DNA from: Trichoplax adhaerens
Taxonomy: Eukaryota; Animalia; Placozoa
Direction: 5' to 3'
Length of the DNA stretch: 64,000 nucleotides
Assembly (NCBI RefSeq): GCF_000150275.1
Contig: NW_002060967.1
Span: 496,001-560,000 of the forward strand
The first letter of the stretch is position 1; every line of letters starts with the position of its first letter. Both the position numbers and the translations under genes were made by a program. Under the pieces are notes generated by a model. The model was not told where the DNA came from. It saw only the letters and a program-made list of their open reading frames with translations, and did not search any database. Below are positions 48,458-55,421 of this stretch, piece by piece.

Positions 48458-50896
48458 ATGGCCATTTATGATTTTTACATTTTCCATCGAGAAGGTACTT
48501 GCATCTATTACTGCCAATGGCACGGCAAGAAACCGCCATCGCCGTCGGTGACAGAGGTAAATGCAGTATGGATAATGTAATATTGATGCTTTAGCCTCTA
48601 GTTGAACTCTTCAGCCATAGCGAGTTGGTGATAAGACACGTCAGATCAGCGACATACTAAATACGAAGAGCAAATGCATTGGCCAACTTTTGACACCGTT
48701 AGACGTATTACTATAAAAGTGTCGCTTAGCATGTTCTACTAGGAGTACAGTAATAAGATGATTGGAAAACGACTAACGCTAGAACAACTGGTAGTGAGTG
48801 GAAGGGAATGATAGAAAGCAATCTACTGTACTGTGTTGGGCAAGATTTTCAACATTTACCCTGCCTTTCCCAGCCAGATAAAGTCTTTTACTGCTATTGC
48901 CTGGCCGGTAGAAAATACTTTAAAATAAAATAAATAAAATGAACCGAGATACTGTAAGTGGTACATCGACCATACTGCAAAGACTCCTATAGTATGCCTA
49001 CTCATATACAACATTGTATAGAAATTGTATATTGTAGCTACTTTGAAATCGAGAATGATCACATCAGATTGGTCTAGTTCCACAGATTGCAATGGAGTAG
49101 AAATCATTTCTCTAGTTTTTCTGGGGGGTTTCTAAGGGTACTGTGGCTACATTTAGGAAGACGCATCTGCAGCCTTAGAAGAACGGCAAATCTAAAATAT
49201 TGGGATCTACATGGAGAAGACATACTTGTACACTTGAACTAGCCAAGATTGCGTTTTACATAGTAAATTATAGTGTAGCTACTAGTTCCACAGATTACCA
49301 ATGGAGTACAGTAGAGATTATTTCTCTAGTTCCTCTAAAAGGTCTGTAGAGTACAGTAGCTACATTCAGGAATGACGTATTTGCAGTCACAGGAGAAGAA
49401 CAAAATCCAAATGTTAGAATCGACATTGAGAAGACATACTGTACAACTGCTACATTTGACGAGGCAAGATCACATTTTAGATAGTGAATTATGTTGTAGC
49501 TACAGTTATAAGATAACAATAAAGTGGATCAACAATCAAGTTCGATGGCTAATCGACCACATCGGATTCGTCTACTTTCACAGATTGCGAATGGAGTACA
49601 GTAGCCACATTTAGGAAAACGCATCTGTAGTCACAGGAGACAGGAATTTCAAATGTAGGGATCGACGCAGAGAAGATGTACTGTATCACTCTGACACTTG
49701 AACTAAGCAAGATCGTATTTTAGATGGTCAATTGTATTGTAGTTGTCTGTCTCCTTAAAATCGAGCGACTACATCATCTACATTATCACAGATTGAAAAT
49801 AGAGCACTGTAGCTATAATGCAAACCTACAGTCACAAGACACGAATTGATAATATCGTCAAAATCAATAAAACAATCAATCACCAGTGTCACGACAATAC
49901 GGCAATATAGAATAGATAAACTTTAATGTCAAATTGGCTAAGCTATGGCCTTGAAAGATAATTATTATAAAACTACTGTGCATACTGTCTCTGCTTTCTC
50001 ATCTGCATTGCTCAATCGAATGCATTTCAGGAGCATCCTGAAACAATTGAAATAAAATTCACATTATTAAATTTTACATCTTTCTTCAACAGCATAATTG
50101 CAAGCTGATGTATGGTTTACTCTACTCACTGAAATCATTCGTACTTCGAATCTCACCCACGGATGGGTAAGTTAGTGCTACTTATTCCTCGATCGATAAA
50201 AGATACTCGTGTAGATATATATATACAGTACTGTAGTACTAGAATTTGTTATATCTACCTGAAATATAACGGTACTATTGTAATAGTCACTGCAAATTAA
50301 AAAAAAATTCAGCTACTTTGTAACATAACAAAATTAAGGAAAACCAATTTCCATGTTAACACATTAAACTTTGATGTGTATGTAATTGAAATATTTTTTA
50401 TTAGTATAGCAACTAGACGAAAAAATAGAATCACCTTAATTTGTGTGCATTTTAATTCTTACATCATTTAGCAAGGATCAATTTTCCAGTTACCGGACTA
50501 GTAAGTATAAGTTAAATTATTATGAAACTCCAAGTGGAATAAAGTTTGTCATGACTACCGATTTGGGTGTTGGTAATATTAAAGATATTATGAAAAGTAT
50601 ATACAGAAAGGTAAATCAATTATACAATTGAATAAACACATTAACTTCAGAATAAATATAGAATAGGATAAACTACCATTCCTAAGTGATAGATCTGGAT
50701 ACGTAATGCCATTTGGCTATGTCCTATATATTATACATAATAGCTGAATTTTGTTTCTCTCTTATTTTAGATTTATGTGGAATATCTAGTCAAGAATCCA
50801 TTTATTGATGTATCAAAGCCGGTTTCTAGTGAATTATTTGTTTCTAAACTAGATGCTTATGTAAAAGAATTACCCTTTTTTGAACCCAAACAATGA
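48458..50896 (+). CDS. TRAPPC1: Trafficking protein particle complex subunit 1 (Bet5, longin/sybindin fold), 4 exons
   Basis: Exons 48458-48556, 50093-50166, 50472-50610 and 50771-50896 give MAIYDFYIFHREGTCIYYCQW..KLMYGLLYSLKSFVLRISP..YRTSKYKLNYYETPSGIKFVMTTD..IYVEYLVKNP..SELFVSKLDAYVKELPFF. Confidence 0.96.
49010..49830. repeat. Diverged tandem repeats of about 210-290 bp in TRAPPC1 intron 1
   Basis: CACAGATT..AATGGAGTA-type anchors at 49081, 49289, 49579 and 49787; shared GAGAAGA(C/T)..ACTG/ACTTG and ACTTGAACTA segments. Confidence 0.8.
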
Positions 50897-51815
50897 AATT
50901 GGCCTCTACAGTAGTGGTTTGAGAGTAGCATCAATTTAATGATATTGCAATATATCTTTGAGAGAGAAAAGAGGATAGACTCCAATAATACTATGTACTG
51001 TATCACACTATGTATCTGCTCTAGGACGCTATCCATTTTTGATGTATTAAAGTTGGAATTACTACTTTGAAGCCTTGTAGACGCATACAGTATTTGAGCA
51101 CTAAAGTGATTTATTCCAAGCTTGTTACAATAATTGTCGTAGTAGAAAGATTGGTAATTTGAATGTGCACATTGCTGTGTTTTTAATGGATAGAATGGGA
51201 CTGATCAAGTGGGTATACATTGTATTAGCATGTTCAATGGTGTTGTATAGTTATCTGATGAATGCATCAACAACACAAATGCTTGTGTGTGCGTTCAGTA
51301 AGCTGTTTACTGTGAAAAACCTTCATTTTAAATTTTGTACAGTATAGTAAAATGAATATACTAAGTTAAGATACGAAAATTGTTTGTTATGATGTTTTAC
51401 GTAGAATATAAGGTGTAATTTTAATTGTTTATTGATATTCACCAAACGACTAGTTTGAACAATTATTATACATTGTAAAATAACATTTGGCTAATTTCAA
51501 AGCAAGTTTACACAAATTTTCCAGCGCTGTAATGAACAAAAGTAGAAATACTTTTAAGTGTAATCATACTGCGCTGGGTAGCTTAAAATAAGTATGAATT
51601 AATTATATGATGTTCTGTTGATACTTTTTTACAATAAAGTATACTATCAGATAAGGTAAATAAAATCTTGACATAGTCTATGTACAGTTGAATTTGTCAT
51701 TACGATAAAACGTGGTTTCAATCCGGCTTGCTAATCCGATGGCACAGTTGCCTTGATTGCAAAAGACAGAGTGCTAGAAATCATAAATTAAAATTAGCTA
51801 CTGCTGTAGGGAAAA

Positions 51816-54482
51816 CTAGGATTGCTCGTTTTGCTGTTCCAATATACGATTGGTAGATATTAGTATTCGAGCGGTCAGCATTGGGCAGTTACAAAAGTAA
51901 ATTTCTTCCAATAAATGAGGCGGTAATCGAGAAACATCCAATTGGCTGTTATCAAAACAAGGTGTATACAGATATTCCTCGGTTGTTTTATTGTATCTTA
52001 CGGTGAATTCCAGTCCTAAATTGATAAATGAAGTAATAGAATAATTTTAAAATTATTTTATAAATTATCTTTTACGATCTGATGGCTGTATTATGCATAG
52101 TTATCATATGGGTACAACTTCAATGCTAACATACTGCTTTGACAGGATTTATTTTACTTTGATGGATTTTATTGTCAAACCTTTTAAATCTTGTGATCGA
52201 ATTTTGAATACTTCTTTGTCCTTATTAACACTACTAAGGGGTAAGGGCTCAATATCTAATCGATTAAACTTTTGATATGCTTTGATAGTCATCGCTTGTT
52301 CTTCGATAACGTGCTAAATAAAAATTGTTGATTTTTAATTTATATCTCATCAAAGTATGGTACCCTTGCTATTTCTAGACAACAAGGATAAGCGTACAAA
52401 GATAGGATATTGATTGATTTTATTCTTTCATTCTCACCCTCATCGCTTCAGTGTCAGGGCTTTCAATTCTACTGTTGCGCAAGTTGTTTAACCTTTCTCT
52501 AGCTTTATTTAATTGGTGCTGCAATTTCTTATTTTCATCCACTACAGTTTGCATTTTGCTATGGTGACACTTGAAGTTCATTTCAGTTATGATATGCAAC
52601 CGATGCAGGTGATCATTTAAGAAATTGTATCTTGTTAGCTAGTCCATTTAGTATCCAGTATTTAACATACACGTATTAACGTCGCTTATTTCTATTCATG
52701 GTAGATGGATTATTACACTGGGTACCGATAACTTACCTCTAACGCGTCTGTTTGTGAATGATTCTGTTGATCATTATTATGCGCGTTGTCTCGGCTATCT
52801 TTTACACCTTGTAATTGCTTTTGCAGGTCTTGCTTTTCATCGATGATACTTTGTAATTTTTTTCGATATAATTCGATTTTTTCATCAGATACTGTAATAA
52901 GCAAAGATTGACTTTCAATTTAATTTGATTCTTTATTATACATTGTGGTATTGGATCACTAGATTAGATGCGTGTCTACATCTGCGATAGAATACATCTT
53001 AATGGAAGTAATTGATGTACAGGATTAGGAAATCCTTTTTTGTTCAGTTCAGTTCAGTTTGAATATACCTATATACTTATGTACTACTATCCTTTCTGCT
53101 ACTGCAGTTGATCATTTTTATTTACGATAATAAACACAATATATCAAGTGTGCTGTATCATATGGCATGAAAGTTTCAACTCAGATCAACATCACCATGA
53201 TATGACAATTTTCATATCAACATCGTGTGTAAGACAGGAAAAATAAATACTCAATACTGCACTTACCTCGACAACGTTCTTGACAATCTAACTCTAATTG
53301 ATGATAGCGTCGTTCGGGTTCAGTCTCTCTGGTTTCTAAAAGTTTTTCGAATAATGCGCGGAAAGTATTTTCATCGGAAGGAATGGATTGATTTTCCTAT
53401 TAGGTAGAGCATAACATTGCAATGGCTTATCACTTTGTAAGTACTGATTTATTTTATGCAAGGTGAAAACAGTGACGCACGTTTGACACAGTTTCAATGA
53501 GCAATATTGGATTCAAAGGTTCAAAAATGGTTGTATTCCATTTGTACACGTATTGATCGTACATTGCATAGACAAATGTGGGATCAAGTGCATTACGACG
53601 GAAAAGAGTTACTAGTTCGGGGTATTTTCTCATCTAGTATAAGGCCTTGTATTAGAATCCTGTTAGTAGGGTTTTGATTGGATACACTTAGGACATAGAT
53701 GTATTGGTAGTCGTATGACAAGATTACTAATAACATAAGGGCATAGGTTATTCAATATACAGTACTGTAATGGCAGTGGTACGATGAAATGACTAATGAT
53801 GTAACAAGAACGACATTGATTGATGTACTGTTTTTTATTTCAGGGATAGATGGATTGATGGAAAGCTACGTTCAAAATCAAGATATCATCTTGGTGGTTA
53901 CAAGTAGGCTTTTCACTTTTATTGCAGAGTGATTTCAAATGAACTCTGTATTGTGATGATGTAGCGAACAATTTGGACAAGTCTGTCTACTGGTCAAGCG
54001 ATGCATTGATTCAATAAACAACAATATTGTAAGCATTCATTGGCGTCCTACGTTGTTGATGGAGGCGATTGGATGATTGATGAATAAGCGAAAGACTATA
54101 CTGTACGATGAAAAGAAGAGATGATGTTGATCGTTATTGTAGGCTGTGATGTGTGTTACAGAGTGATTTAAAATTGGAATGATGTATCAGGAATAGCCTA
54201 GGACAAGACTTTCTACTATGATGAATGGATGCATCCACTGTGTATTTTTCTACACGATCGTGAGGGAGTTTTGGACTGGGACAGGAAACTGCAGTACTAT
54301 CAAGGCAACGAAACGTAGGACGAATACTCCAAGTTATTTGAAGCGTATTTCCCACTGACCTTGGTCGACTTTGAAGTTTTCCTTGATTGATGTCTATTTC
54401 TTCTTGCCATTGGTGAATTTTCATGACTGGAGTCGAGAGGACGCTTGATCCTAGTATACCTCCTCGAGCTGCTGGTGGCCAT
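51816..54482 (-). CDS. Probable monopolin subunit Csm1/Pcs1 (plant TITAN9) homolog: basic N-terminal tail, coiled coil, C-terminal RWD-type domain; 6 exons, 290 aa
   Basis: Exons 54482-54360, 53396-53267, 52891-52737, 52569-52438, 52313-52181 and 52015-51816 total 873 nt in frame. The coiled coil begins LFEKLLETRETEPERRYHQLELDCQERCRVSDEKIELYRKKL. The C-terminus is AYQKFNRLDI..EVFKIRSQDLKGGLEFTVRYNKTTEEYLYTPCFDNSQLDVSRLPPHLLEEIYFCNCPMLTARIL. The gene model is solid; the family assignment rests on remembered motifs. Confidence 0.7.
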
Positions 54483-54551
54483 TTTAACAATTTGAATAAT
54501 TTTGAATTTGACCGCTACCGTTAAAAAAGTTCCACAATAAATAGAAATGCT

Positions 54552-54857
54552 GCTGTACAGTGTACAGTCCACTAGGGGACTGAGCTTACGATACATTGTA
54601 CTGTGCCTGCAGACCGTGCTACTGTAGTACAGTATTTTTGGAGGATAAATACTGTACTGCAACCACTGTACACTGTACGAGACTGCAACAGAGGGTCGAG
54701 ACAGACAGGCGCATAGTACAGTCGACAATGTACTGTACATTGTACTGTACACTGTATACAGTACAATGATTGTAGGCGTGCTTGTACTGTACTGTACACT
54801 GTACAGTACAGTACAGTACAGTACAGTACACTACACTGTACATTGTACTGTACAGTA
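54552..54857. repeat. (CTGTA)n/(TACAG)n self-complementary cluster in the Csm1-like/WWOX divergent promoter
   Basis: For example GTACTGTACTGTACACTGTACAGTACAGTACAGTACAGTACAGTACA at 54784-54830, with many more CTGTAC/GTACAG words from 54554 onward. Confidence 0.88.
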
Positions 54858-55421
54858 TAATCACCTTAGCCGCAAAACACAGTGCTGCAAAATGGCGATT
54901 TGAAGGGAAACAACAGTCGTACCTTCTTCTGCAATGATTTCAAATCTGCAGGATACTGACTGAATTCTAGTTTGAAAATTGCATCGATTGCTCCTTCATC
55001 TATCTTTTTATATCAAATGACAGGCAAATTTGACAGCTTGACTACAATTTAGAGCGCCTTACACCACTCCAATAACAACCGCCTCACACTCGTACACTAC
55101 CGTACAGTCTACAGTCTACAGTATTTTGTGGCCAATGTGGACTGTACTAGCGTATCCAGCAACAGGATACGACTGGTCTGTCATAGACTCACGGTCGCCA
55201 TCGCCATACCAATGCCTTGTACCTGGCCTGTTCCTTCAGCCAGTTGGCTGAAAAGTCAGTCCATCCATCCAGGAGAAAGTAGGCACTACTTCGTCAACAG
55301 TATCCATTCAAAATGGCCAAGTAGGCAAAGTCGACACAATTCATTGCTTTTACTCATCATCATCATCTGCCACAGTATCGCCATTCATTGATCATCTTCA
55401 TCACAAGTAGGAGGACCAACG

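What the first reader, a model, noticed from the sequence alone, without database searches (positions are those of the whole stretch)
51816..54482. Probable monopolin Csm1/Pcs1 homolog in an animal genome
Seen: six phase-compatible GT-AG exons encode a 290-aa protein with an Arg/Lys/Ser-rich N-tail, a long coiled coil and a globular C-terminus. The ORF track shows only fragments of it and none of the C-terminal domain. Known: fungal Csm1/Pcs1 and plant TITAN9 have a coiled coil plus an RWD-like domain with the pattern Y..LTGL.I...F......L.F.L....f.YtP......LP.YL.eeI.F, and the plant proteins end with a CP.F..R-type helix. Here the pattern reads AYQKFNRLDI..VF......GLEFTV...EYLYTP.....LPPHLLEEIYFCNCPMLTARI. 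The N-terminal LLETRETEPERRY...QERCRVSDEKI also recalls the fungal coiled-coil start. Csm1 cross-links kinetochores through Dsn1 and tethers rDNA, and no ortholog is recognised in human, fly or worm. Inference: this early-branching animal retains a monopolin-type kinetochore or rDNA clamp. I cannot check whether this ortholog is already catalogued.
Basis: partly seen in the sequence, partly recalled or inferred. Interest (0 to 1): 0.85.

Follow-up and report, generated by a model that had tools for sequence, protein, structure and literature searches.

The report
Placozoan Csm1-like kinetochore clamp gene
This is a real, expressed six-exon Trichoplax gene for a 290-residue coiled-coil protein whose C-terminal domain most resembles the yeast and plant kinetochore cross-linker Csm1, but a 2019 survey already scored Csm1 as present in Trichoplax, so it is a confirmation, not a discovery.

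Summary
Six GT-AG exons on the minus strand (54482-51816) give 873 nt, 290 aa plus a stop. Spliced contigs from four public runs in three studies show all five junctions, including the AAG acceptor.

The window is Trichoplax adhaerens. The gene is TRIADDRAFT_61676, "uncharacterized protein". Its public 246-aa model skips exon 4. The 290-aa model equals TrispH2_008118 of Trichoplax sp. H2 letter for letter.

The Csm1 reading is probable but not proven.
- Against: Pfam Csm1, HMMER against 1.84 billion proteins and against PDB sequences find no relative outside Trichoplax. Two single-sequence AlphaFold2 models are unreliable in the C-terminal domain.
- For: in the ESM Atlas the last 115 residues land on Csm1 clusters, by language-model features (0.89, 0.87, 0.82) and by ESMFold structure (TM 0.76).
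- For: a Trichoplax Spc24 control lands on Spc24, not Csm1.
- For: Spc24, Spc25 and Mad1 genes lie elsewhere in the genome.
- For: a parallel homodimer is predicted (0.73 against a best control of 0.00).

Plowman et al. 2019 (Table S1) already score Trichoplax as Csm1-present, Dsn1-absent and Dsn1-N-absent. The novelty is therefore low. What remains open is the receptor of this clamp in an animal with no recognised Dsn1.

The parts
54360..54482 (-). Exon 1: ATG at 54482-54480, residues 1-41, a Ser/Arg/Lys-rich tail predicted to be disordered.
   Evidence: Joint 53396/54360 in contigs of X10 and X14. The contig 5' ends lie at 54491-54510.
53267..53396 (-). Exon 2: residues 42-84 plus the first base of codon 85; start of the coiled coil (LLETRETEPERRY...).
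   Evidence: Joints. Helix from residue 50 in both AF2 models.
52737..52891 (-). Exon 3: residues 85-136; coiled coil, then a short Asn/Gln-rich break at about 122-131.
52438..52569 (-). Exon 4: residues 137-180, second coiled-coil segment. It is missing from the public T. adhaerens model (P0001).
   Evidence: Present in the contigs of all four runs. Present in P0005 and absent from P0001. The acceptor is TTCAAG.
52181..52313 (-). Exon 5: residues 181-224 plus one base; end of the coiled coil and first strands of the C-terminal domain.
   Evidence: These residues lie at the predicted dimer interface.
51816..52015 (-). Exon 6: residues 225-290 and the TAG stop; the rest of the Csm1-like alpha/beta domain and the C-terminal helix.
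   Evidence: 100% match to P0001 residues 182-246. Atlas neighbours of residues 176-290 are Csm1 clusters.
54483..54860 (-). Short 5' UTR and upstream region with three CTGTACAG palindromes (54553, 54799, 54848); probably the promoter.
   Evidence: Contig 5' ends at 54491-54510. The motif occurs 9 times in the window against 0.68 expected. The promoter role is inferred.

Best explanation
The locus is the single-copy Trichoplax adhaerens gene TRIADDRAFT_61676. It encodes a 290-aa protein with three parts: a basic, Ser-rich disordered tail (1-49), a two-segment parallel coiled coil (50-197), and a C-terminal alpha/beta domain of about 95 residues (about 198-290). It is most likely a very divergent member of the Csm1/Pcs1/TITAN9 family, the RWD-like core subunit of monopolin. 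It is probably the gene behind the Csm1 = 1 entry for Trichoplax in Plowman et al. 2019. The inferred mechanism is as follows. Two chains pair in register through the coiled coil, placing two globular heads side by side. Each head binds a short peptide motif on a partner. The dimer, or a higher assembly through an unknown Lrs4-like bridge, then cross-links kinetochore units or repeated chromatin. Shown here: the gene structure, its expression and the single copy number. Predicted: the homodimer and the likeness of the domain to Csm1. Inferred from other organisms: kinetochore or nucleolar localisation, peptide binding and cross-linking.
For: Gene model and RNA. Identity with public proteins and the organism name. 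Single copy. Atlas search of residues 176-290: the three best feature hits, and the fifth, are clusters that carry PF12539 Csm1 (0.89, 0.87, 0.82, 0.78; 188, 175 and 152 shared features). The best structural neighbour is a Csm1 cluster (TM by query 0.76, 106 residues aligned), followed by a chlorophyte 'Monopolin complex subunit Csm1/Pcs1' cluster (0.71). Specificity control: the RWD region of Trichoplax Spc24 gives Spc24 clusters (0.94, 0.93, 0.92; 27 of 30 hits) and no Csm1. Spc25, Spc24 and Mad1 are encoded elsewhere in the genome. Homodimer prediction for residues 45-290, two copies: score 0.73, best of 3 controls 0.00. That mark was reached by 21 of 30 proteins solved as pairs of one chain and by 0 of 23 solved as single chains; on eukaryotes 17 of 29 and 0 of 30. 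The runs agree in at least 64% of their contacts and partner pLDDT is at least 71. The contacts are parallel and in register (183-183, 186-186, 190-190, 193-193), and the heads pack on the helices. Foldseek on the first AF2 model put yeast Csm1 chains at ranks 1, 3, 4, 5, 6 and 8 of 350,542 chains, though the best E-value was only 0.23. Literature: Table S1 of PMC6823300 scores Trichoplax Csm1 = 1. A Tetrahymena CSM1 ortholog was accepted on comparable evidence, TM 0.67 to 3N7N plus an HMM score.
Against: There is no sequence-level support. Pfam PF12539 does not hit the exons, the joined public protein or the six-frame genome. phmmer against PDB sequences lists no Csm1 even at E <= 10. HMMER of the last exon against 1.84 billion representatives, two word-based searches and a metagenome scan find only the two Trichoplax proteins. 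Both AF2 models have pLDDT of 30-45 in the C-terminal domain. Foldseek on the second model shows no Csm1 in its top 50. All Atlas feature scores are under 0.9, which the tool calls a lead only, and features plus structure count as one source. The dimer pass may come from the model's memory of Csm1-like structures and is not specific to Csm1. I could not confirm that the Trichoplax entry in the 2019 table is this gene. Trichoplax is scored as lacking Dsn1 and the Dsn1-N motif that co-occurs with Csm1 elsewhere.
Confidence: 0.72

Rival explanations
1. It is a different RWD-type or RWD-like coiled-coil protein. It could be a divergent kinetochore subunit such as a Zwint/Kre28-, CENP-O/P- or Mad1-like protein, or a placozoan-specific one. 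In that case its resemblance to Csm1 reflects only the shared helix plus small alpha/beta domain architecture.
For: The fourth Atlas feature hit is a Mad1 (PF05557) cluster at 0.78, not far below Csm1. Human KMN chains and Spc24-Spc25 globular domains appear among the weak Foldseek hits of both models. No Csm1 profile hit was obtained.
Against: Csm1 clusters take ranks 1, 2, 3 and 5 by features and ranks 1 and 3 by structure. The Spc24 control shows that the method separates RWD families in this genome. Canonical Spc24, Spc25 and Mad1 are found at other loci by the same Pfam six-frame search. The Pfam models of those families do not hit this protein.
Confidence: 0.18
2. It is a lineage-restricted coiled-coil protein with no relation to kinetochore RWD proteins, and the Atlas neighbours are chance.
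For: It is an orphan at sequence level. The Atlas states that shuffled proteins get a first hit of 0.8 or more a third of the time, and that none of its statistics were measured on parts of proteins. The best PDB sequence hits are coiled-coil noise, such as HAUS1 at E = 0.049.
Against: The shared-feature counts of 188 and 175 exceed the 170 mark that, per the tool, 9 in 10 same-family hits reach against 1-2 in 10 chance hits. Features and ESMFold structure independently point to the same rare family. A published curated survey expects one Csm1 in this species.
Confidence: 0.1

Closest known systems
Csm1 (S. cerevisiae) / Pcs1 (S. pombe), core subunit of monopolin; Pfam PF12539; structures 3N4R, 3N4X, 3N7N, 5KTB
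   Same: An N-terminal coiled coil is followed by a C-terminal alpha/beta head of about 100 residues. A parallel homodimer with paired heads is predicted. It is the nearest family by language-model features and by ESMFold structure.
   Different: The Pfam or HMMER signal is absent. Trichoplax has an extra 49-residue basic Ser-rich tail and a longer, interrupted coiled coil (290 aa; yeast Csm1 is shorter as I recall, which I did not test). No Lrs4/Mde4, Mam1 or Dsn1-N partner is recognised in Trichoplax.
TITAN9 (Arabidopsis) and other non-fungal Csm1-like proteins (Dictyostelium Cenp-68, Tetrahymena KiTT16, Nematostella and Amphimedon Csm1)
   Same: These are divergent Csm1-like proteins found only by sensitive profile or structure methods. 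The two best Atlas feature clusters for the Trichoplax domain are green-algal and plant Csm1 clusters, in which only 16-27% of members still hit Pfam Csm1. TTN9 is centromeric and binds DSN1 (PMC12362390).
   Different: No experiment exists for the placozoan protein.
Spc24 / Spc25 / Mad1 C-terminal RWD domains
   Same: They share the coiled coil plus small RWD-like head architecture and the kinetochore context.
   Different: These families have their own genes elsewhere in this genome. Their Pfam models do not hit this protein. The Spc24 control does not cross-hit Csm1.

Membership tests
Csm1/Pcs1 (Pfam PF12539) | Significant match to the family profile (gathering score 22.6 bits) | tested here: not met
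   No hit at E <= 10 for single exons, the joined public protein P0001 or the six-frame genome. The control genomes are all prokaryotic, so that genome search is uninformative. In the Atlas, only 16-38% of the members of the three best-matching (algal, plant and ascomycete) Csm1 clusters hit this model, so failure is common for divergent members.
Csm1/Pcs1 | N-terminal coiled coil followed by one C-terminal alpha/beta globular domain of about 100 residues | tested here: met
   DSSP of the two AF2 models gives helices at 50-121, 132-169 and 176-197, then 3-4 strands and a terminal helix. Confidence is high in parts of the coil only (residues 50-120). It is low in the head (pLDDT 30-45).
Csm1/Pcs1 | The C-terminal domain is nearer to Csm1 than to other RWD families (language-model features and ESMFold structure) | tested here: met
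   Csm1 clusters score 0.89, 0.87 and 0.82 by features, and TM 0.76 and 0.71 by structure; Mad1 scores 0.78. The control is specific. Scores under 0.9 are leads by the tool's own standard.
Csm1/Pcs1 | Predicted fold superposes on solved Csm1 structures (3N4R, 3N7N, 5KTB) | tested here: inconclusive
   With the first AF2 model, Csm1 chains rank 1, 3, 4, 5, 6 and 8, but the best E-value is 0.23 and TM is 0.2-0.44. With the second model there is no Csm1 in the top 50. Both models are low-confidence in the domain.
Csm1/Pcs1 | Parallel coiled-coil homodimer with paired heads | tested here: met
   score 0.73 against a best control of 0.00. The mark was reached by 21 of 30 proteins solved as pairs of one chain and 0 of 23 solved as single chains (eukaryotes 17 of 29 and 0 of 30). 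At least 64% of contacts are shared between runs and pLDDT is at least 71. Contacts are in register. This is a prediction only, may come from the model's memory, and is not specific to Csm1.
Csm1/Pcs1 | Conserved hydrophobic cavity on the head (Sc L161 / Sp I241) that binds Dsn1-N/Box 1, Tof2 and similar motifs | not testable with these tools
   No Csm1 sequence or alignment could be obtained by reference, so residue equivalence could not be established. The definition is taken from PMC6823300.
Csm1/Pcs1 | A Dsn1 with the N-terminal acidic-FF-basic motif in the same genome | tested here: inconclusive
   The six-frame search with PF08202 (MIS13/Dsn1) found nothing, but it rang nowhere, so it is uninformative. 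Table S1 of PMC6823300 scores Trichoplax Dsn1 = 0 and Dsn1-N = 0.
Csm1/Pcs1 | An Lrs4/Mde4 bridging partner; kinetochore or nucleolar localisation | not tested
   Lrs4 is not detectable outside fungi even with curated profiles. Localisation needs an experiment.
Spc24 / Spc25 / Mad1 RWD | Match to PF08286, PF08234 or PF05557 | tested here: not met
   There is no hit in this protein. The families match other loci: C1392:818631-818960, C1412:7849031-7849388 and C1413:1802180-1803041.

The most novel reading that the evidence does not exclude
Trichoplax keeps a Csm1-type homodimeric clamp although it has no recognisable Dsn1 and no Dsn1-N motif. The placozoan protein would then dock on a different receptor: a cryptic Dsn1, another KMN or CENP-C peptide, or a nucleolar or SUMO-protease partner. 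Its extra basic N-terminal tail may contribute. That would give an animal system in which monopolin-type cross-linking of kinetochore units can be tested.
Probability: 0.25. Interest if true: 0.55.

Novelty: already known. Interest (0 to 1): 0.3.

Why it matters
Csm1 is now inferred to be an ancestral eukaryotic kinetochore protein that most animals lost. A 2022 review still states that no monopolin ortholog has been identified in metazoans (PMC7614391). The 2019 survey, however, lists Nematostella and Amphimedon in its text and Trichoplax in its supplementary table. This report ties that table entry to a concrete, transcript-verified gene. It also corrects the T. adhaerens model, which lacks a 44-residue exon. 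It gives experimenters a defined target for asking whether a monopolin-type clamp works at animal kinetochores. It does not change the picture of which lineages have Csm1.

Tried and rejected
- Pfam exon by exon and on P0001 gave only coiled-coil noise: CCDC138_cc, INO80E, DUF5798.
- PF12539 and PF08202 six-frame searches of the genome gave no candidates and the controls were silent, so they are uninformative.
- phmmer against PDB sequences with P0001, exon 6 and exon 5 gave HAUS1 and GldN noise, a picornavirus VP3 at E = 1.7, and nothing.
- HMMER of exon 6 against 1.84 billion representatives returned only P0001. Three weak hits to repetitive proteins (P0002-P0004) were rejected as low-complexity matches.
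- Two word-based searches returned only the two Trichoplax proteins. One call failed on an E-value limit.
- A metagenome scan gave no relative.
- AlphaFold2 without an alignment on P0005 and P0001 gave heads too poor to use. I did not run pdb_via or pdb_via_wide, because these tools leave out stretches under pLDDT 60, which is the whole domain.
- The second Foldseek run did not repeat the Csm1 ranking.
- The search of earlier findings gave no relevant note.
That is memory, not a test, and I give it no weight.

Full report
**Observation.** Reading the minus strand of 51600-54700 and joining the proposed exons in a script gives six exons:
- 54482-54360
- 53396-53267
- 52891-52737
- 52569-52438
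- 52313-52181
- 52015-51816

They total 873 nt, which is 290 codons and a TAG. Every intron begins with GT and ends with AG, and the phases fit.

**RNA evidence.** Twenty public runs hold the stretch or part of it. I laid four of them on 51700-54600. All are kept as contigs.
- Contigs of X10 and X14 span all six exons.
- Contigs of X8 and X11 span part of the gene.
- All five junctions are exactly those of the model: 52015/52181, 52313/52438, 52569/52737, 52891/53267 and 53396/54360.
- The weak-looking TTCAAG acceptor before 52569 is used in all four runs.
- Contig 5' ends lie at 54491-54510, so the ATG at 54482 is the first one in the transcript.
- Low-depth contigs over intron 1 are unspliced RNA or DNA carry-over.
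- Contigs cannot exclude rare isoforms.

**Handling of the spliced model.** The exons were joined only inside scripts, to check the frame and to compare with a public protein. All whole-protein searches used P0001 and P0005, public proteins that the tools returned.

**Identity of the gene.**
- HMMER of the last exon against 1.84 billion representatives found one true hit, P0001 (100% over 65 residues).
- The word-based search names P0001 as TRIADDRAFT_61676, "uncharacterized protein", of Trichoplax adhaerens, on a 660,745-base contig. It also returned P0005, TrispH2_008118 of Trichoplax sp. H2, 290 aa.
- P0001 (246 aa) is the same protein without exon 4.
- P0005 equals my model letter for letter.
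- The genome has 105.6 Mb in 1414 contigs, and the window lies at 496001-560000 of contig C1390. This fits T. adhaerens.
- The gene is single-copy.

The public T. adhaerens model therefore skips a 44-residue exon that every transcript contig contains.

**Sequence-level tests of the Csm1 idea all fail.**
- Pfam Csm1 (PF12539) hits neither the exons, nor P0001, nor the six-frame genome (uninformative because nothing rang anywhere).
- phmmer against all PDB chain sequences lists no Csm1 at E <= 10, with P0001, exon 6 or exon 5 as query.
- No relative outside Trichoplax appears in 1.84 billion representatives, in two searches of the 5.8-billion-sequence library, or in JGI metagenomes.

At sequence level the protein is an orphan.

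**Evidence that does point to Csm1.**

*ESM Atlas.* The Atlas holds P0005. For residues 176-290, feature hits 1, 2, 3 and 5 are clusters that carry PF12539 Csm1:
- 0.89, chlorophyte, 188 shared features
- 0.87, streptophyte, 175 shared features
- 0.82, ascomycete
- 0.78, "Monopolin complex subunit Csm1/Pcs1"

A Mad1 cluster scores 0.78. By structure of the Atlas's own ESMFold model, the best neighbour is a Csm1 cluster (TM by query 0.76 over 106 residues). The third is a chlorophyte monopolin Csm1/Pcs1 cluster (0.71). The tool counts both searches as one source and calls scores under 0.9 leads.

*Specificity control.* I ran the Trichoplax Spc24 RWD region, found, through the same search. It returned Spc24 clusters (0.94, 0.93, 0.92; 27 of 30 hits) and no Csm1. 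The method therefore separates RWD families in this genome.

*Rival families elsewhere.* Spc25, Spc24 and Mad1 are found at other loci by the same six-frame Pfam search. This excludes the reading that this gene is one of them.

**Fold test with my own models: inconclusive.** AlphaFold2 without an alignment gave good confidence only for the coiled coil (pLDDT 70-92 at residues 50-120). The head scored 30-45, in both P0005 and P0001. The secondary structure does repeat between the models: a long helix, three to four strands, a short helix and a terminal helix.
The best E-value was 0.23.
- With the second model no Csm1 chain appears in the top 50.

I give this line little weight.

**Homodimer.** ESMFold2 folded two copies of residues 45-290.
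- The score was 0.73 against a best of 3 controls of 0.00.
- The mark was reached by 21 of 30 proteins solved as pairs of one chain and by 0 of 23 solved as single chains. On eukaryotes the counts are 17 of 29 and 0 of 30.
- The runs share at least 64% of contacts and partner pLDDT is at least 71.
- The contacts are parallel and in register (183-183, 186-186, 190-190, 193-193).
- The heads (201-203, 216-230, 267-280) pack against the end of the coiled coil.

This is the arrangement described for Csm1 homodimers (PMC6823300). The pass supports binding but does not show it. It may come from the model's memory, and it would also fit other coiled-coil RWD proteins.

**What is known.**
- Plowman et al. 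2019 (PMC6823300) searched 109 proteomes with curated profiles. [quoted passage not shown]
- Their Table S1 scores Trichoplax adhaerens as Csm1 = 1, Lrs4 = 0, Mam1 = 0, Dsn1 = 0 and Dsn1-N = 0. The presence of a Csm1 in this very species is therefore already catalogued.
- The sequence file is not held, and no paper names TRIADDRAFT_61676. The link to this gene is my inference. It rests on the gene being single-copy and being the only candidate.
- A 2025 plant paper says Csm1-like proteins occur in "eukaryotes except most animals".
- A 2025 preprint accepted a divergent Tetrahymena CSM1 on a TM of 0.67 to 3N7N plus a 36-bit HMM score. That is comparable in kind to the structural evidence here.

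**Mechanism.**
- Shown: a spliced, expressed, single-copy gene.
- Predicted: a parallel coiled-coil homodimer carrying two Csm1-like heads, preceded by a basic Ser-rich tail with NLS-like runs.
- Inferred from fungi and plants: each head binds a short hydrophobic motif flanked by charges, and the dimer cross-links copies of its partner at kinetochores or in repeated chromatin. In fungi the dimers are themselves bridged by Lrs4.

Which partner is bound in Trichoplax is open, because neither Dsn1 nor its Dsn1-N motif is recognised there.

**Verdict.**
- The family assignment is probable (about 0.7) but rests on language-model and predicted-structure likeness plus a published table, not on a significant profile match.
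- The function is inferred.
- The novelty is low, because the presence of Csm1 in Trichoplax is already published.
- The useful by-products are the transcript-verified 290-aa model and the missing exon in the T. adhaerens annotation.

Noticed in passing
window 52438-52569 (minus strand): The public T. adhaerens protein model TRIADDRAFT_61676 (246 aa) omits this 132-nt exon. All transcript contigs and the Trichoplax sp. H2 model include it. This looks like an annotation error rather than an isoform, but contigs cannot exclude a rare skipped form.
   Followed up: yes
window 54553-54560, 54799-54806, 54848-54855; also 47671, 47714, 44683, 45935, 35144, 22918: The palindrome CTGTACAG occurs 9 times in the window against 0.68 expected (0 of 100 shuffles reach 9). 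Three copies sit just upstream of this gene's transcript start, among many TACAGT-like repeats. It is probably a placozoan promoter motif. Another first-stage note (s1-801296) describes the same clusters.
   Followed up: partly
window 50443-50631 (plus strand): An exon of a convergent neighbour matches Pfam Sybindin (PF04099, E = 4.4e-10), a TRAPP-complex subunit. The transcript contigs of X10 and X14 run more than 1.2 kb past 51700. They probably merge the overlapping 3' ends of the two convergent genes.
   Followed up: partly
window 52524: The contig of run X10 reads G for A on the plus strand. On the coding strand this is TTG to CTG, Leu to Leu, a synonymous variant in exon 4. The H1 and H2 proteins are otherwise identical over all 290 residues.
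   Followed up: partly
window 53397-53516 and 53839-54490: Low-depth contigs in the RNA runs X8, X10 and X11 cover parts of intron 1. One X8 contig reads from exon 2 through the acceptor into the intron. This is unspliced RNA, DNA carry-over or an alternative 5' end.
   Followed up: no
G000:C1400:1468455-1468613 and 1486348-1486506: Two identical-length weak matches to the Spc25 Pfam model (21 bits, just under the cut-off) lie 18 kb apart on another contig. They are separate from the clear Spc25 gene on C1412 and may be a duplicated RWD-like exon.
   Followed up: no
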